Source: Trichosphaerium sp. ATCC 40318 (taxonomy: Eukaryota; Protista; Tubulinea). Taken from it: a stretch of 64,000 bases of DNA. Where the stretch lies: the NCBI GenBank assembly GCA_038496445.1, contig JALMLS010000578.1, positions 62,001 through 126,000 on the forward strand, written 5' to 3'. The notes under the pieces are model-generated. The model did not search any database, was not told the origin of the DNA, and was given only the letters and a program-made list of their open reading frames with translations. Of this stretch, positions 1 through 33,600 are shown piece after piece (positions within the stretch are counted from its first letter, which is position 1; each line of letters starts with the position of its first letter). Position numbers and translations under genes: made by a program.

Positions 1-330
1 TTGCTTTATAAGTGAATCTAAAAAAGACACCCCAGCCGAATTCTCCGCTCCCCAAACCTAGAAAAAATACCAATTGCTCATTGAGTACGCCCAACCTGAG
101 CGAAGCTAAGTTGACACCGTTGTAGAATCAGTAGTTGCCTTTTGTGTCGTCACATCGCTGGCAATTGCTGTATACTATGTATACTTGTAGATGCAATCCA
201 ATAATCACGTGTTTGCAAATGATTCTGAAGAGCATTGAGTGAACTTGAACAGTATTGAAAGGGAGTGGAATACCTCACTTGTTATACAACAAATACGTAA
301 AGTGCGACAGCTCGAACCATCAAAAACGGC
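1..330 (-). CDS. Probable 5' part of an unidentified spliced gene running off the window
   Basis: Splice-like sites and short open exons (VWGAENSAGVSFLDSLIKQ); no recognisable motif. Confidence 0.25.
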
Positions 331-551
331 TAGTTTGTGCAATAAGCTACAAAAAAAATAAACAAAAATCAACTAAAACCAAGTTTCTTGCAATTACACA
401 ATCCCTCTGCGAGAAAGAAAAAAATCAAAAAAAACAGTTTCGTATGTTCTTATTTCAGTAAAGATTACATATCAATCAATTGTATTTATTAACATTCTTT
501 TCCAAATAAAGTAAGTACAGAGCGCGAATCAATCTCTTTTCACGTTTAAAT

Positions 552-889
552 CTAGCCGAGGTGCATTCTTCGTTGCCTAACAAACCATAGGCTCACTTGC
601 CTATATTCATACCACATTCTTCGGCAATGGCGTTTTTCTGATCTATGCTTGGAAATGGGGTGTGCCACTGGTCATTGTACCACTGTTGTAATAAGATCAG
701 TTGTTCAAGTGATATCACGCTGTTGTTGTAGTACATTCTTCTTTGCGTAACGACCCATAGGCTCACTTGACCTACAGTCATACCACATTTTTCGGAAAGG
801 ACTTTTTTTTGAGCAGTGGTTGGAAATGGGCTGTGCCAGTGGTCATTGTACCATTGTTGTAATATGATGAGTTGCTCGAGTGTGGTCAT
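552..889 (-). CDS. Double TALE-like homeodomain-only protein; the second domain has an apparent 1-nt deletion near position 600
   Basis: Two tandem units QWYNDHWHSPFPT..KK.L...CGMTVGQVSLW..QRR with the TALE-type PYP-like loop. Restoring one base at ATA GG(C) CAA GTG gives QVSLWFVRQRRMHLG* ending at 552. Intronless. Confidence 0.8.
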
Positions 890-948
890 GCTGTTGGTAT
901 TGTTGGCGTTGCGTTATTATGTTTAAATAGGACGCTCTAGTGGTAGAA

Positions 949-1050
949 ATCAATCATCAACTTTTTTCGAAATACCAACATGAAAGCAGAAACAAGATAA
1001 GTGAAAACATGCAGCATTTTGCTGGTTTTGGTGGCACCCCTTTGATTGAT
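949..1050. promoter_or_regulatory. Inverted pair of TGATTGAT motifs upstream of homeobox gene A
   Basis: ATCAATCA at 949-956 and TGATTGAT at 1043-1050; the same arrangement occurs upstream of gene B. Confidence 0.55.
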
Positions 1051-1272
1051 ATTTAGTTACCTTTGATTCACCTAATTAAACAGTCCTTACGCTCAACAAA
1101 CATCAACGCTGTCGCTATAACGTGTAAAGTGCAGTTGCTCGAAATAATAAAAACTAGCAAAATTGACAATGAGTCGGTTATCGGTCCTCGTATCTAGAGG
1201 ACCAGAGGCATACAAAGTGACTACACTCATAAACAAATAAATCCAGGTACAAACTTGGGAAAAATAAACGGT

Positions 1273-1475
1273 AATAGCATGAAATGCATCAACTACGCAT
1301 GGGAATTGATAACATGAGGTCCTTTGTTGCGAAAATAAAACAAAAATGTTTTTATTGAAGAGCGACTCAAATTGACGTTTTACTGCGTAGTAGTGATCCA
1401 AAGTAGATATTAATACGTTTATTAAGAAAAATTATAACATTGATACAAAGGCTCCAAAACAAGCAAGTTCTGAAT
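1273..1475. repeat. Non-coding direct repeat, copy 1 (3' of homeobox B)
   Basis: Aligns with 2127-2319, e.g. aatagcatgaaatgcatcaactacgcatgggaatt...gatacaaaggctccaaa.caagcaagttctgaat. Confidence 0.95.
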
Positions 1476-1526
1476 ACTATCATTTCTCCTCCCTTTTTGG
1501 AATTCGGCTTTCGCTCATCTCAGCCT

Positions 1527-1721
1527 TCATTGTTGAGGATGTATTTCTTCTCCCTCAGCTTTTTTACTTTTTCGTAGTCTAGTGAGCCAGACGCTTACTT
1601 GGCCAATTGTTGCGCTGCATTCCTCTGCAAGAGCTTTCTTCTGTTCTACAGTCGCATATGGAGCGTCTTCATGTTCTTTGTACCAATGTTGTAAAACGTT
1701 GAGCTGCTCGAGTGTTGCCAT
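1527..1721 (-). CDS. 64-aa TALE-like homeodomain-only protein
   Basis: LQHWYKEHEDAPYATVEQKKALAEECSATIGQVSVWLTRLRK; paralogous to both neighbours and shares their 5' leader. Confidence 0.85.
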   Translation of the reverse strand: MATLEQLNVLQHWYKEHEDAPYATVEQKKALAEECSATIGQVSVWLTRLRKSKKAEGEEIHPQQ

Positions 1722-1786
1722 GCTGTTGATGTTGTAGATGTTGTGTTATAATGCTTAAATGGAACAAGATGTTAAAATTGATAAGC

Positions 1787-1913
1787 GATTGATATCAATC
1801 AAGGTGAGTTATCAATCATCAACGTTTTAGGAGACGAGTGTTGTGAGCTAACTGAATACAATGTGAAAAAAAACAATGTGAACAATAAACCGCAACTTTA
1901 GGTTCTGATTGAT
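1787..1913. promoter_or_regulatory. TGATTGAT motif cluster upstream of homeobox gene B
   Basis: Palindrome GATTGATATCAATC at 1787-1800, ATCAATCA at 1794 and 1811, TGATTGAT at 1906-1913. Confidence 0.55.
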
Positions 1914-2126
1914 ACCTTAGTTTTCATCCCCCATCGCCCAGTGTTTGCGCAACGCCTATATCAAGGATGGGGCTGTAACGTGTAAAACTGTTGATCAAAT
2001 TAATAAAACAATTGCCAACACCAAATAATAGTGTGTTGTTCATCAGGGCTAGTATCAAGAGGGTTAGAGAGATAAACAAACAAGCAACTGACAACTTAAA
2101 ATAATATTGTGAAAAATTTTAACGAT

Positions 2127-2319
2127 AATAGCATGAAATGCATCAACTACGCATGGGAATTCATAACATGAGGTCCTTTGTTGTGAAAATAAAACAAAAA
2201 ATGACAATATTGAAATTGAGGTTTTACTGTGCGGTAGTGATCCAAAGTAGATATTGATACGTTTATTATGTAGAATTATAACATAGATACAAAGGCTCCA
2301 AATCAAGCAAGTTCTGAAT
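2127..2319. repeat. Non-coding direct repeat, copy 2 (3' of homeobox C)
   Basis: Aligns with 1273-1475. Confidence 0.95.
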
Positions 2320-2363
2320 TTCCGTTTTGAATGTAAGTTGCTTTTTCGTGTTGTCTTACATCT

Positions 2364-2564
2364 TCACTCTAATGGATTGGTAATGTGATTTCTCGTGTTT
2401 GGGTCGTTGCGGAGATCTCTCAATCTTTTGACCCAGATGCTTACTTGCCCTACTGTTGTGTCACATTGTTTTGCAAGCATCTTCTTTTCAAAGGTTGAGT
2501 ATGGAGACGTATCACTTTCTCTGTACCAACGATCTAATATTTCAAATTGTTCAAGTGTGGCCAT
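2364..2564 (-). CDS. 66-aa TALE-like homeodomain-only protein
   Basis: LDRWYRESDTSPYSTFEKKMLAKQCDTTVGQVSIWVKRLR; third paralog with the same 5' leader. Confidence 0.85.
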   Translation of the reverse strand: MATLEQFEILDRWYRESDTSPYSTFEKKMLAKQCDTTVGQVSIWVKRLRDLRNDPNTRNHITNPLE

Positions 2565-2629
2565 GCTGTTGATGTTGTGCTATTATGTTTAAATAGATCG
2601 TTCTCGGTTAAAGTTGATAAACAGGTAAA

Positions 2630-2650
2630 ATCAATCATCCCATATCAATC
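2630..2650. promoter_or_regulatory. TGATTGAT motif upstream of homeobox gene C
   Basis: ATCAATCA at 2630-2637 and ATCAATC at 2644-2650. Confidence 0.5.
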
Positions 2651-3134
2651 TTGTACGTCGAACAAATGCCTGTTAAAGTTGTGATCCTAAACAAGGCTAC
2701 ATACACTTAGACTGTACTCATTTGTTTCGCTCACTCCAGCAATCGTCGCGTAACAATAAAAAGCTAAGTAACTTTAACTATTTTGAAGCGAATAACACGT
2801 GAACGTTGTAGACTTTTCCTTGTGTTTAACAAACAACCTCACCTAAATTTGCCTAAATTACCACACAATATGACAACTCACTTTAGTTGCTAGCTCCGTT
2901 ATTCGCACTACTTGCTATTAAAACACATGCACACAGCTACTTGTTTGAAGCAAAGGCTACATCAGGTTAAGAGGGATAGGTTGATTGTTGTAGAGTTGCG
3001 GTCAAACTGAGTTCAACAAACAACTTTATTTCGGCTTATGACAGGATTTAATCTGGCAAGCGTGGTGTCTTTAACATACGCAGAATGGAACTGCACAGTA
3101 CTCTTATCTTTATTTATTTTTTTAGACAACATAG

Positions 3135-6100
3135 CTATTCTGGGTATTGTTGGTATATATTACACGCAGCTTGAGTGATGAAACTGAAGCGAGTATTCGA
3201 TTTAGACAACAACTAATAATATTAGTACTCGATGTTAGAAAAATAAAATTGATAACTTACGTGTGCGCCTCAGGGTTTCTAGTTCTGCTCTTAATGCATT
3301 TCTCTCTCGCTTCACAGATTCGTATTTTTCCCTTAAACCATCATCCACACTTTCAGTGTGTACAGGTCGTTGACTATGATAGAAAAGTCAGTCAGTTAAA
3401 CACGTGATCAGTTTAAAATTTGATTTGGGAGAATCGTGCCTATTAGGATCGGAGTACTGTGATCCGTCCAGCTCTGTCCTTTCTTGATTGTAATCCGATG
3501 TAATCTTATCTTTACCGGGGTGGTATATAATCCACACTTTGATCGTGAACAGCATGAGCAACGTTCCTATGAAAAAGTTAAAGAAAACCTTCGAAGAGAG
3601 TTGCTGTTGCTAAATGTTTGACAAACAATAAGCTTTACTTGTCGTCATACATACCTGTTGTACTCATCCATATAGCCAAGCCAGTTGTTACACTCAATTG
3701 CGCTTCGCTTGTATTTACGATGAAGCCGAGAATGAGTAAAAGAGCCATCCATACACAGATGTTGTAGATCGAAAGGCCTATCCACTTTGATTCATTAAAG
3801 TGCATTGGTACTTTCCTTGCTACAAAAGCGAGCCAGCATCCCCATATCAAAAGACCGCCCTAACGAAAAAATGTAAGTTAGAGCGCATGAACTTTGTGCT
3901 AGTGCTTTGAAGAAACTGCCACACTTAAAAGCAAGCGTACATTGTATGCAATCAAAACAATCAAGAAAATAAGTGCTCTATCGCTATGACATTTAGCAAT
4001 AGTAAAATCGTCATTATTTGATCTAGGTATAAGTTCTTTTCGCGTTGGTGATGAAGCAGACCAGAGAATGAGAACAATCTACAAGTCAACGATTAATCAA
4101 AAAACCATGCATTGTATAAAACGAAGACTTACAATCTCAGCGGCTATAAAGGCAAGTGTCATCTGAACAATGGACCATACGCTAATTGTTACAACCTTCA
4201 GATTTTTCCTTGAAGAACGAACATAAGTTAAGAAAAATGAGAGATTATATAAGCTTACACGCCAGTAAAGATTCTGACAATTCTATATGTCTTTGCTAGA
4301 AGTGGTCTACGACAGATTGTAAATACTTGTCAAGAGTCGTATTAAACATACGCAAATAGTACAATAAAACCGACAAATGGAACCCAAATACGTAATTCAC
4401 AGATAACATCGTCAACAGGAGCCGCCCTGTCAAACAGTAAGAAAAAAATAAGATTTTTATCGTCCAGTTTTAAAAAACCAACCCACGTACCATATAATAA
4501 CGCCAATGTATGATATGAGAGCACCTAAAATCAGTGTGGCTAAGAACGGAGGACTGGAAGACTGAAGAATAAAACTTGAGCTCCTTTTTAAACAAGTTAG
4601 GCTAAAAACATCAAAAATACGAGTTCCTTTACCAGTGCGTTATTAATATCATCTGTAGACCAAACACTAGAATAATACCAAGTCCAGCAAGAACTAAAAG
4701 CACTAAAGAAGTAGAATCCGTCCATTTTGTTGGCTGAAAAATTCTCTCCTTGTCGAGCACACGAAGAACTACTTTCTCATCGTCATACACCAGCTCTCCG
4801 TTAAAATCTAAATTCGGCATTTCCAGATCGCTAAACACTCCACTCCTATTCTTGACTTCTGTAACAAAAATTAGACGTCAAAACCACTCAACAGGAGTAA
4901 AAATAAACCGTACTAAAAAGAGTGAATTCAAGACCAACACTGATAGTTTCTGGTAACGACACAATCTTCACTTTGCCTGCAATTTTAGCTCCATTAGTCA
5001 TTTCAAGCGTAGATAACCCTAAAGCCATCTCAATAATAGTCCCACGCTGCAATTCCCAAGGGACAAGTGTTTGTGACGCTCCCTTTAAGCAATTATTTTT
5101 AATATGTGCACAAAATTGTTTTGTTTTAAAAACGCACCTCAATCTTTATCGTAGCGTTTGCAATAAACGTAGAGTTTTCCCCTGCAAGCTCCACTCTGTT
5201 ACCCATCTCAAAATATCCAGACTCTATCAACAAAACTGAATTGTCCATAGTGAAGACGACATTCAACCGAGATTGTATTGTCAATGAACCTTCAAATACT
5301 AGTCAGCCAAAAAAGTCCCACGTGCTAGTTTTAAAAAATATACCTTGAGATCTAAGGACGATATGACGTAGATTTAAAGCACCAAGGATGAAAGTTGAGT
5401 TACTGGTAGGTAGTAATACCAATTCTTTGTCTGTAGCACGCTTTTCTGGATCGTCAAAACCCTGCTTTATTGTATAAGATTAGAGTAATTGCTTGTATCA
5501 TGCTACCTGAATAAGTCCGTTTTCGTCCCATATCATGCCTTCTTCGACCGCTAGTGCAGACGCTCTTATTTCCAGTGTACCGTCTACCATTCTCAAAGTT
5601 GGTACCTTTGTGATAAAAGCCATTAAGTCGCAATACTTAAAAACCTAACTTACTGTTGTAGGGATATCGATATTCCAGGTTGAGGATACATGTATGCTAT
5701 TTAGCGTGTTTCCTACAAAATTTTGCACTTCTCCAGAGACATCCTGAGGTTCATTGCCTTCAAAGACATTACGCTCCAAACTTCCAGCATCCAACATTTC
5801 GACCGCTACTTTGTTCAATAACCATCTAAAAAAGAGGAGGAAAATAAAGTACCAAATATCGTGTTGTTCGTAAATTTACAATCTTGTACTAAACCACTAT
5901 ACATTAGAATAGCTCCGCCTTGCTTTGGTGATATATTAGAATTGAATTCACATGAATCCACAAGCATGTATGTATCTTCAGCAGCCCACACTGCGCCTCC
6001 ATTCTCGGCAAGGTTTTTATTGAAGGTAGTCTTGTAAATCTCTAGAGATTGGAAATCGCCTGAGTCCACCAGGTACGCTATTCCTCCACCAAATTCTGTA

Positions 6101-30600: not shown

Positions 30601-33600
30601 TGTATCCGATCTGGATGGCATTATGAGCGAGTTCTCACGAGCTTCTACCAGAGACCTAAAAAAGCTTAAAGCAAAGCCAGTTTCTGACGGTGTTGGTTTC
30701 GCAGCTGAATTGGATGAACTAGACGACCTTGTAAATGATCTTGCGTACGAATAACCGCTCCAGGCTTAAAATAAGCTGACCAATATTTGTTTAGAGACCT
30801 TAATGGGGATTCTGGTTCTTCTTCATCTGGTGACGATGGTAAGAAGAAGAAAAAATCAAAAGGAGGGTTTGGTGTCAAAGTTGGTGGCAAAGCAAAAGGC
30901 GGTCTCAACCTCGGCAATGGTGACTCGTCATCTTCCTCTGATTCCGATGACGGCAAAAAGAAGAAAAAGTCAAAAGGTGGCTTTGGTGTAAAGATTGGAG
31001 GCAAGGCTAACCTTAACGCTGGTGGTGATACGTCAGACTCTGATGAATCGAAGGAAAAGGGTAAAAAGAAAAAGAACAAGTCCAAAGGTGGTGTTGGTGT
31101 CGACCTCGATGTCAACCTCGGTGGTAAATCTAATGGCGGCTCTGGCACTTCCTCATCTTCCTCCGATGACGATGCTGACAGCAAGAAGAAGAAAAAGGCA
31201 AAAGGCGGCTTTGGCGTCAAAGTTGGAGGCAAAGCAAAAGGTGGCCTCAAACTCGGCAACGGAGACTCTTCATCTTCCTCTGATTCTGATGATGGTAAAA
31301 AGAAGAACAAATCCAAAGGATTTGGTGTCAAAGGAGGTGTTAAACCGAAAGGCAAAGCCAAGGGCGGATTTGGTGTTGATGTAGACGCTGATCCATTTGA
31401 CGATATGGCTGATCTCGATGACCTCTTAGACGGCTTTGATGTGAAGGCATCAACCAGAGATAATGACGCAAATGTAAACGCGTCTGCTGGTATGTCACTT
31501 GATGACGATCTTGCCGACCTAGATGATGTTCTTGCCGGTCTAGACGACAATAAAAAGTCTAAAGGCGACTCTTCATCTTCATCTGATGACGATGGTAAGA
31601 AGAAGAAAAAGTCAAAAGGAGGGTTTGGTGTCAAAGTGGGCGGCAAAGTAAAAGGCGGTCTCAAACTCGGCAATGGTGACTCTTCATCTTCCTCGTCTTC
31701 CTCTGATGATGGTAAGAAGAAAAAGTCGAAAGGCGGCTTTGGTGTCAAAGTTGGTGGCAAGCCTAAAGGAGGCGTTGGCGCTGATATTGACATTGACGTC
31801 AACACCGACATTGATGGCTTAGACGATCTTGATGACCTTATCAGTGGTCTAGATGATGATGCAAAGAAGGCAGATGCTGATGTGTCTGTTGACACAGATG
31901 CTCTTGCCGATTTGGACGACATCGTTGCTGGACTTGATGCTGATATTGGTCTTGATGTTGATGGTTCTGCCAAAAAGAAGAATGGATCATCATCTTCGTC
32001 ATCATCATCATCAGATTCTGATGGCAAGAAAAAGAAGGGTAAAGCCAAGGGTGGCTTTGGTATCAAGGTGGGCGGTAAGCCGAAGGTCAAGGGAACCGTT
32101 GGCGCAGATGTTGATGTGGATCCTCTCGATGATTTAGCTGACCTTGATGACTTGGTTGCTGAATTCAACACTGGCGTCAGTTCTCCTTCAACACAGCGCT
32201 CTGACAACGTTGACCTTGAAGGTGATTTGGAAGGTCTTGACGATTTGGTAGCCGAATTTAACATTGGTATCAAACCCATGGCTCCAGGTGGCAAATCTGC
32301 TAAAAAGTCATCGTCTTCATCTTCCTCGTCTTCTTCTAGCTCTGATGGAAAGAAGAAAGCCAAGGGCGGTTTTGGCGTCAAAGTGGGCGGTAAAACAAAG
32401 GTGAGAGGCGGTATCGGTGCTGACATTGATCCTCTTGACAACATGGATGACATTCTTGACGATTTGGATGACTTGGATGACGTTGTTGCGTCACTCAACA
32501 CAGATGATGATAAAGTCAATGTCACAGCTTCTACACGATCAAATGAGCCTGTTTCAGCCTCAACACCATCGTTGTCAAAACCTGCACCTAAGATCAATAG
32601 CCGATCTTCCTCACGATTCAGTCTTGATGACGAACTTGATGACCTTGATGCGATCATTGATGACTACAAGCTCATTGAAAAGGACGAATCTCCAAAAGAA
32701 CCACAAGTTCAAGTTAAAGTTACACCAGAGTGCGTAGTTTTTATAACAGTAAACACATCATACAAGTGCTAATGTATCATCAAATAGGATCGCTGTTTCT
32801 AAGCCTAGAGTACTCGAACGTCCCGCTTCTGGTCCAGATTTCCCAGCACCTCCTTCTACAGGACCTGCACCACCAAGAGAAGACTTGATACGTATGGTCA
32901 TGCGTGCAATTGATACTCTCCGAAAACCTGCTGGATCTCCAGAAAACGAGGTACTTACATATTTTTCTTGTTCTTCAACAAAAAGAGATTGCGCTAATGA
33001 TCCTATTACAGAGACTCGAGCAAACAATGGAAGCTGCTGTAATGCACGCCAAGAAAATGTTTGGGCTCACTGAGAAACCATACGCAGAACTTGCAGTCGA
33101 CAGTGATGCTGCCCGCAGATCACTTGCAGATATCATCATTGTTGTCATTCTCTTTGTTCGCGACTTGTGGAGGGATGTTGCATTGATATTCGATCTCGAG
33201 ATTCGCGTAACCCTAATGTTACAATGCACAGACCTGGCCAATCGTGCTATACGCCTATTGGAGTTCTTTGATACAATATTCAAGCTTCAAGAAGGTGGTA
33301 GAAAGCAACACGCGATGGAATATGAGATACAAATAGCTGGTATGCCTTAAAATCTTGGATTCGCGCATAGTTTGGTTTTTTTCATCCTGACCTCGTTTTA
33401 GATATTAAAACACTTCTCGCGCAAATACTACGTAAGCTCAAGGCTTGCACATTGGAACAACATAATACCGAACAGTACACTGGTGGATTGGCAGCTACCA
33501 TTGAGAATATTGACCCAATCTTCAAACAATGTGTCTCTAATATAAGCATGGGCTTTATGACACACGAGGACATCTCAAACGCTTGCCATCCTGGACTACG

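What the first reader, a model, noticed from the sequence alone, without database searches (positions are those of the whole stretch)
552..2564. Tandem array of homeodomain-only TALE-like microproteins lacking Asn51 and the N-terminal arm
Seen: three intronless mini-genes (four homeodomains) begin directly at helix 1. Helix 3 reads WVVTQR, WFVRQR, WLTRLR and WVKRLR instead of WFxNxR. Established: Asn51 makes the key adenine contact; HOPX is a non-DNA-binding homeodomain-only cofactor; TALE heterodimers drive haploid-to-diploid transitions in Chlamydomonas and fungi; Dictyostelium MatA/MatB are small homeodomain-like mating-type proteins. Inference: a fast-evolving set of dominant-negative partners or mating/life-cycle switches.
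Basis: partly seen in the sequence, partly recalled or inferred. Interest (0 to 1): 0.75.

Follow-up and report, generated by a model that had tools for sequence, protein, structure and literature searches.

The report
Three tiny homeodomain-only TALE genes
Three neighbouring mini-genes in a protist (probably amoeba) genome each encode little more than a PBX-like homeodomain that has lost its main DNA-reading residues, and PBX-type binding sites sit in their promoters, so they look like small modulators of a homeobox network, though nothing yet shows they are expressed.

Summary
On the minus strand, three ~835-bp tandem units each carry a short ORF (98, 64 and 66 aa). Each has a TATA-like box, a conserved start context, in-frame stops upstream and an AATAAA downstream. 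All are TALE homeodomains, closest to PBX/Extradenticle, and two were modelled as three-helix homeodomain folds. They start at homeodomain position 7, so they have no basic arm, and they lack Asn51 and Arg55.

One correction: the fourth homeodomain is cut by a 1-bp deletion at Gln44, so "WFVRQR" is out of frame.

The paralogues are old (synonymous sites saturated) and constrained (dN/dS about 0.1-0.36), not shown to be fast-evolving. I found no TE ends, no viral relatives and no close relatives among 1.84 billion representative proteins. Seven of the window's eight TGATTGAT (PBX dimer) sites lie in these 2.2 kb.

Best reading: these are autonomous homeodomain-only TALE paralogues wired into the organism's TALE network as cofactors or decoys. 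That function is inferred.

Earlier scan notes report other TALE clusters with the same site in this genome, and one covers this same stretch. Verdict: new variant of a known kind, moderate interest.

The parts
593..889 (-). Mini-gene G1, 98 aa. It holds homeodomain 1a (722-889, complete, helix 3 WVVTQR) and homeodomain 1b (596-718), which is truncated after helix 2 at Gly-Lys-stop.
   Evidence: (Homeobox_KN E 4.6e-18, two stretches)
552..599 (-). Out-of-frame remnant of helix 3 of homeodomain 1b (QVSLWFVRQRRMHLG*). A 1-bp deletion separates it from helices 1-2.
1527..1721 (-). Mini-gene G2, 64 aa. One TALE homeodomain, helix 3 WLTRLR, followed by a short acidic tail.
   Evidence: E 1.3e-7; pLDDT 82.7; TM 0.78-0.88 to MATalpha2 and Exd
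2364..2564 (-). Mini-gene G3, 66 aa. One TALE homeodomain, helix 3 WVKRLR, followed by a divergent tail.
   Evidence: 16.9 bits, below cut-off; 1e-17 to G2; pLDDT 76.6, three helices
921..929 (-). TATA-like box TATTTAAAC of G1, about 35 nt before the ATG. The matching boxes are at 1753-1761 (CATTTAAGC, G2) and 2587-2595 (G3). All three genes share the start context CAACAGCATG.
   Evidence: (family D6)
1418..1423 (-). AATAAA about 100 nt after the G2 stop. The matching signals are at 2262-2267 (G3) and 485-490 (G1).
471..2637 (.). Seven exact TGATTGAT sites: 471-478(-), 949-956(-), 1043-1050(+), 1794-1801(-), 1811-1818(-), 1906-1913(+), 2630-2637(-). Each gene has at least one site 20-60 nt upstream of its TATA-like box. 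A 14-bp palindrome, GATTGATATCAATC, lies at 1787-1800.
   Evidence: 0.21 expected in this stretch; 0 of 5000 simulations reach 7
1260..1475 (-). Conserved non-coding block 3' of G2, 91-93% identical to 2114-2319 (3' of G3). Its role is unexplained.
   Evidence: families D3, D4; no Rfam match (16); no better-than-shuffle fold (52, 53)
2114..2319 (-). Second copy of the conserved 3' block, behind G3.

Best explanation
G1-G3 are three autonomous, tandemly duplicated small genes. Each encodes essentially only a PBC-like (PBX/Extradenticle-like) TALE homeodomain.

The fold is kept by purifying selection, but three main DNA contacts of TALE homeodomains are gone in every copy: the basic N-terminal arm, Asn51 and Arg55. 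The proteins therefore probably cannot read DNA on their own.

Their promoters carry TGATTGAT, the tandem PBX core site. They are thus probably transcriptional targets of the organism's full-length TALE factors. They would act back on that network through homeodomain-surface contacts, as cofactors or decoys in a HOPX-like or microProtein-like feedback.

Shown: gene anatomy, fold, missing residues, constraint and site enrichment.
Inferred: loss of DNA binding, regulation by TALE factors and the feedback role.

Sub-confidences: real protein-coding genes about 0.75; weak or no autonomous DNA binding about 0.6; feedback modulator about 0.3.
For: - Gene anatomy: each unit has a TATA-like box, a shared start context, in-frame stops 6-9 codons upstream, a stop codon and an AATAAA.
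- Family: Homeobox_KN. The best solved relatives are PBX1/Exd at E 2e-9, aligned without gaps through the TALE loop.
- Fold: AF2 gives three helices at pLDDT 82.7 and 76.6. Foldseek gives TM 0.78-0.88 and rmsd 1.1-1.3 Å to MATalpha2 and Exd.
- Constraint: pS is 0.65-0.75 against pN 0.28-0.36, so dN/dS is 0.08-0.26 between genes and 0.36 between the two G1 repeats. Codon-position differences run pos3 > pos1 > pos2, and the chance of an open 63-codon frame is about 0.01.
- Missing contacts: positions 51 and 55 are non-Asn and non-Arg in all four copies. Among 278 related domains scorable at both positions, 60% have both.
- Sites: 7 of the window's 8 TGATTGAT lie in 2.2 kb, against 0.21 expected. 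TGATTGAT is the site-selected tandem PBX1 core (PMC6426973).
- Precedents: microProtein feedback loops (PMC9638782), and the C. cinerea HD1 mating-type protein (an unrelated use of the label, not the HD1a/HD1b repeats here), whose homeodomain is dispensable (PMC4915694).
Against: - There is no expression evidence.
- The proteins lack the MEINOX/PBC dimerisation domains, so no known TALE-TALE interface remains.
- Helix 3 is still basic (Arg51, Arg53, Lys54/56/57 in G2), so some DNA binding is possible.
- Net charge over the core domain (0 to +2) is not different from canonical TALE domains (mean +1.7, sd 2.7).
- One of the four homeodomains is frameshifted.
- The TGATTGAT sites at matching positions in the duplicated units are not independent events.
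Confidence: 0.4

Rival explanations
1. They are still DNA-binding small homeodomain factors. They would work as one half of a heterodimer, like yeast MATa1 or Dictyostelium MatA/MatB, with binding through the basic helix 3 and specificity set by the divergent C-terminal tails. In that case they could be life-cycle or mating determinants.
For: - Helix 3 keeps Trp48, Arg53 and 3-5 basic residues.
- MatA and MatB are small homeodomain-like proteins that bind DNA through basic helix-3 residues, and their C-terminal tails confer specificity (PMC5580921).
- The G2 and G3 tails are unrelated to each other.
- 28% of related domains also lack Asn51.
Against: - The arm, Asn51 and Arg55 are all missing.
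- No second class of homeobox gene lies within 61 kb.
- There is no evidence of allelic or idiomorphic variation.
- No sequence match to MatA/MatB or significant match to MATa1 was found, even at E up to 10 (a1 at E 0.13, no Mat chain).
Confidence: 0.25
2. They are decaying, untranscribed relics of a duplicated homeobox exon.
For: - Homeodomain 1b is frameshifted.
- G3 falls below the Pfam cut-off.
- The recognition helix is degenerate.
- No relatives or transcript-derived proteins were found.
Against: - Three ORFs have stayed open despite saturated synonymous divergence, with a chance of about 0.01 each.
- dN/dS is below 0.4.
- Core residues (Leu16, Trp/Tyr19-20, Pro24, Trp48, Arg53) are kept.
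- The TATA-like box, start context and TGATTGAT sites are conserved within otherwise diverged promoters.
Confidence: 0.15
3. The ORFs are exons of one larger spliced gene that encodes a multi-homeodomain TALE protein.
For: - The top database hits are single proteins with 3-7 tandem TALE homeodomains.
- G1 itself carries two homeodomains in tandem.
- A CAG lies directly before each ATG.
Against: - In-frame stops lie 6-9 codons upstream of each ATG, and stop codons follow each domain.
- I saw no GT donor by eye between the G2 stop and the conserved 3' block.
- Spacers are about 640 bp, against a mean intron of 75 bp reported for the likely organism (PMC10521059).
- Each unit has its own TATA-like box and AATAAA.
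- There is no polypyrimidine tract before the CAG.
Confidence: 0.07

Closest known systems
PBC-class TALE homeodomains (PBX1, Extradenticle)
   Same: They are the best sequence match among solved structures (E 2e-9) and align without gaps through the three-residue TALE loop. The motif KCG-x-TV-x-QVS-x-W in helices 2-3 is shared. The flanking DNA is rich in the PBX dimer site TGATTGAT.
   Different: There are no PBC-A/B domains and no basic arm. Asn51 and Arg55 are replaced, and position 50 is not Gly. The proteins are 64-98 aa rather than about 400.
HOPX (homeodomain-only protein of vertebrates)
   Same: It is also a roughly 70-aa protein made of a homeodomain alone, lacks DNA-contact residues and acts as a cofactor (established knowledge). 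It is the second-nearest language-model neighbour, score 0.83, which is only a lead.
   Different: HOPX is a non-TALE homeodomain. No HOPX chain is matched even at E up to 10. This is convergent at best.
Plant and animal microProteins (LITTLE ZIPPER, MIF, KNATM, Id)
   Same: They are small single-domain paralogues of multi-domain transcription factors, often transcriptional targets of the factors they inhibit (PMC9638782).
   Different: Classical microProteins keep the dimerisation domain and lose the DNA-binding domain. Here the crippled DNA-binding domain is kept and the dimerisation domain is lost.
Dictyostelium MatA/MatB and yeast MATa1
   Same: They are small homeodomain(-like) proteins of about 100-130 aa with life-cycle roles, and MatA/MatB are from the Amoebozoa, the likely phylum here. 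Their tails confer specificity (PMC5580921).
   Different: They bind DNA through helix 3. There is no detectable sequence relationship. They are not TALE-type and not tandem arrays.
Basidiomycete HD1 mating-type proteins
   Same: They are TALE-type proteins whose homeodomain is dispensable for function (PMC4915694).
   Different: HD1 proteins are long, with dimerisation, NLS and activation domains, and they pair with an adjacent HD2 gene. No such partner lies in this window.

Membership tests
TALE superclass homeodomain (Pfam Homeobox_KN) | Profile match above the curated cut-off | tested here: met
   G1 scores 65.2 bits and G2 31.8 bits against a 24-bit cut-off. G3 scores 16.9 bits, below the cut-off, but is clearly homologous to G2 (1e-17).
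TALE superclass homeodomain (Pfam Homeobox_KN) | Three extra residues between helix 1 and helix 2 | tested here: met
   The alignment to PBX1 runs without gaps across the loop (H-x-x-x-P-Y/F-x-T).
Canonical DNA-binding homeodomain | Asn51, Arg53, Trp48 and a basic N-terminal arm (Arg5); Arg55 in TALE proteins | tested here: not met
   Trp48 and Arg53 are present. Position 51 is Thr/Arg/Arg/(Arg). Position 55 is Met/Ser/Leu/(Met). The protein starts at position 7.
PBC class (PBX/Exd) | PBC-A/PBC-B domains N-terminal to the homeodomain | tested here: not met
   The ORFs begin at homeodomain position 7, and in-frame stops lie 6-9 codons upstream. Pfam finds no other domain.
HOPX family | Sequence homology to HOPX (a non-TALE, 60-residue-type homeodomain) | tested here: not met
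   No HOPX chain appears among PDB matches up to E 10. The TALE insertion is present.
Dictyostelium MatA/MatB | Sequence homology to MatA/MatB; idiomorphic mating-type locus | tested here: inconclusive
   No Mat chain appears up to E 10.
microProtein (functional class) | Small (<20 kDa), single domain, paralogue of multi-domain factors | tested here: met
   The proteins are 64-98 aa with a single domain type. Relatives in the library are 180-990-aa TALE proteins.
microProtein (functional class) | Forms non-productive complexes with the related factor | not testable with these tools
   This needs two-hybrid assays, pull-downs or multimer modelling with the organism's TALE proteins.

The most novel reading that the evidence does not exclude
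This would be a self-limiting switch built from a homeodomain. Full-length PBC-like TALE dimers would activate the three mini-genes through TGATTGAT sites. The resulting homeodomain-only proteins cannot read DNA themselves. They would dock onto homeodomain partners, or onto the W-motif that normally fills the TALE pocket, and shut the circuit down or give it stage or mating specificity through their divergent tails. It would be the first microProtein-type feedback module in Amoebozoa, and one that keeps the DNA-binding fold rather than the dimerisation domain.
Probability: 0.2. Interest if true: 0.75.

Novelty: new variant of a known kind. Interest (0 to 1): 0.5.

Why it matters
[quoted passage not shown] The probable source organism is an amoeba with a famously complicated life cycle that has never been explained at the molecular level.

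A set of homeodomain-only TALE paralogues flanked by PBX-type sites gives a compact, testable handle on that network: three genes of about 200 bp and one 8-bp site. If they are active, they would show a second route to HOPX-like cofactors, starting from a TALE rather than a typical homeodomain.

Tried and rejected
- Word-index protein search with G2: no candidate.
- Exact-protein look-ups for all three ORFs: not on record. A control ORF of the window is not on record either, so these blanks say nothing about expression.
There was no RNA, strain or frameshift check.
- Viral contigs and metagenome contigs: no relatives.
- Rfam on 1-3200: nothing.
- RNA folding of the conserved 3' block: no better than shuffles.
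- TE hypothesis: no terminal repeats, and no copies elsewhere in the window.
- Net-charge argument for loss of DNA binding: rejected, because the core-domain charge is within the range of canonical TALE domains.
- GTAAGC/GTGAGC at Gln44|Val45 as a splice donor: rejected, because the downstream frame keeps Trp48 and Arg53 in all copies, and PBX-type QVS codons give the same letters.
- Earlier-findings search by sequence and by words: blank.
- Organism identity (Trichosphaerium) comes from earlier scan notes. It is only consistent with GC content and the published statistics, and was not verified here.

Full report
**What is there.** On the minus strand, window 450-2700 holds three head-to-tail units about 835 bp apart, with ATGs at 889, 1721 and 2564. 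Their ORFs are G1 (593-889, 98 aa), G2 (1527-1721, 64 aa) and G3 (2364-2564, 66 aa).
- Each unit has a TATA-like box about 35 nt before the ATG: TATTTAAAC at 921-929 and 2587-2595, and CATTTAAGC at 1753-1761.
- All three share the start context CAACAGCATG.
- An in-frame stop lies 6-9 codons upstream of each ATG, and an AATAAA about 100 nt after each stop.
- This is the anatomy of three autonomous small genes.
- A six-frame scan with two homeodomain profiles finds no other homeobox sequence in the 64 kb.
- The next gene to the right is an ordinary class-C GPCR exon (7tm_3). The window also holds MORN, sortilin and MaoC genes.

**Homeodomain identity.**
- Pfam Homeobox_KN matches G1 (E 4.6e-18, two stretches) and G2 (1.3e-7). 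G3 matches at 5.6e-3, which is 16.9 bits against a 24-bit cut-off. G3 is nevertheless plainly a paralogue, at 1e-17 to G2 by tblastn.
- A profile of the four domains finds PBX1 and Extradenticle as the best solved relatives (E 2e-9 to 8e-9). Meis follows at about 3e-7, then TGIF and PKNOX1. The alignment has no gap across the TALE loop.
- AlphaFold2 gives three helices for G2 (pLDDT 82.7) and G3 (pLDDT 76.6).
- Foldseek places the G2 model on MATalpha2 and Exd homeodomains, with TM 0.78-0.88 and rmsd 1.1-1.3 Å.

**Missing DNA contacts.**
- From the PBX1 alignment, residue 1 of each protein is homeodomain position 7. The basic arm (Arg5) therefore does not exist.
- Position 51 is Thr (1a), Arg (G2) and Arg (G3). 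Position 55, an Arg in most TALE domains, is Met, Ser and Leu.
- Trp48 and Arg53 are kept.
- Among 322 domains in the 150 best library hits, 72% have Asn51. Of the 278 scorable at both positions, 60% have both Asn51 and Arg55, and 19% lack both, mostly inside multi-homeodomain proteins.
- The loss is therefore unusual but not unique.
- The net charge of the core domain (0 to +2) is within the range of canonical TALE domains. Charge is no argument either way.

The second homeodomain of G1 is broken. Where repeat 1a reads GGTCAAGTGAGC, repeat 1b reads GGCAAGTGAGC. This 1-bp deletion ends the ORF at ...NIGK*. The helix QVSLWFVRQRRMHLG* (552-599) is in another frame.

**Selection.**
- Between genes, synonymous sites are saturated (pS 0.65-0.75) while pN is 0.28-0.36. 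Nei-Gojobori dN/dS is 0.08-0.26 between genes and 0.36 between repeats 1a and 1b.
- Differences run codon position 3 > 1 > 2 in every pair. An open 63-codon frame has a chance of about 0.01 in this composition.
- The fold-core residues are invariant, while the base-contacting positions 47, 50, 51 and 54 and the C-terminal tails differ.
- So these are old, constrained paralogues. 'Fast-evolving' is not shown.

**Relatives.**
- The word-index search was blank.
- The exhaustive profile search of 1.84 billion representatives gave 1064 hits at E ≤ 1e-3, but none is close. The best single-domain scores are about 50 bits, whereas the family's own members score 118-128 bits.
- The highest total scores belong to proteins with 3-7 tandem TALE homeodomains in one ORF, from unidentified eukaryotic metagenome contigs.
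- Viral and metagenome contig scans found nothing. No terminal repeats or dispersed copies suggest a transposon.

**Cis elements.**
- Seven of the eight TGATTGAT sites in the window lie in 471-2637. About 0.21 are expected in this stretch, and none of 5000 first-order simulations reaches 7.
- Each gene has at least one site 20-60 nt upstream of its TATA-like box, in the gene's orientation. G1 and G2 also have a conserved distal site in the opposite orientation.
- The G2 promoter holds a perfect 14-bp palindrome made of two GATTGAT.
- TGATTGAT is the tandem PBX1 core recovered in site-selection experiments (PMC6426973).
- The surrounding promoter DNA is only 55-70% identical between units, so the sites are conserved within diverged sequence. 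Sites at matching positions are still not independent events.
- Earlier scan notes (unchecked) report several large TALE clusters elsewhere in this genome with the same site enriched. They name the organism as probably Trichosphaerium. I could not verify the organism. GC content fits the published genome (PMC10521059), and that paper does not mention homeobox genes.

**Mechanism.** The best-supported reading is a set of homeodomain-only TALE paralogues that cannot read DNA unaided. Full-length TALE factors would switch them on through TGATTGAT, and they would modulate that network by protein contacts.
- Precedents are HOPX, the microProtein feedback loops of plants (PMC9638782), and basidiomycete HD1 proteins, whose homeodomain is dispensable (PMC4915694).
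- One weakness needs stating plainly. TALE proteins heterodimerise through MEINOX/PBC domains (PMC6219170), and these proteins lack them. Any decoy action must use the homeodomain surface, for example the TALE pocket that binds Trp-containing motifs. That is untested.
- The main rival is that the still-basic helix 3 binds DNA weakly within a heterodimer, as in MatA/MatB (PMC5580921) or MATa1.
- Relic and multi-exon readings are less likely, for the reasons given under the rival explanations.

**Unexplained.** A 215-bp non-coding block 3' of G2 (1260-1475) and G3 (2114-2319) is 91-93% identical, although the adjoining coding sequences have saturated synonymous sites. It has no Rfam match and no unusual RNA fold. 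It is either a strongly constrained cis element or local gene conversion that spares the coding sequences.

**Verdict.** This is a new variant of a known kind (homeodomain-only cofactors and microProteins) and of moderate interest.

Noticed in passing
window 1260-1475 and 2114-2319 (minus strand): A non-coding block 3' of G2 and G3 is 91-93% identical, although the neighbouring coding sequences have saturated synonymous sites. It is absent behind G1 and elsewhere in the window. It has no Rfam match and no unusual RNA fold. It is either a constrained cis element or local gene conversion.
   Followed up: partly
window 1787-1800: A perfect 14-bp palindrome, GATTGATATCAATC (two inverted GATTGAT half-sites), lies in the G2 promoter next to two further TGATTGAT sites.
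   Followed up: partly
P0001-P0008; L004:3588-5141, L005:266-1105: The library holds single-ORF proteins with 3-7 tandem TALE homeodomains (for example 517 aa with 6, and 439 aa with 7) from unidentified eukaryotic metagenome contigs. Many of their domains read WFxxER, with a non-Asn at position 51.
   Followed up: partly
P0105, P0127, P0129, P0143; L001, L002, L003: The best single-domain hits read QVSxWFS[T/N/D/G]LRKS, sharing the x-Leu-Arg pattern at positions 51-53 with G2 and G3. Contigs L001 and L002 each carry an ORF hitting MnmE_helical beside the homeobox gene. The organism is unknown.
   Followed up: no
window 3638-3850 (minus strand): The next gene to the right has a class-C GPCR (Pfam 7tm_3, E 4.9e-12) exon. 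This shows the array sits among ordinary host genes.
   Followed up: partly
window 30666-32772 (both strands): Two roughly 660-aa low-complexity ORFs overlap on opposite strands. The plus-strand one is rich in Ser/Asp/Gly/Lys repeats (GGFGVKVGGK units). I did not examine them.
   Followed up: no
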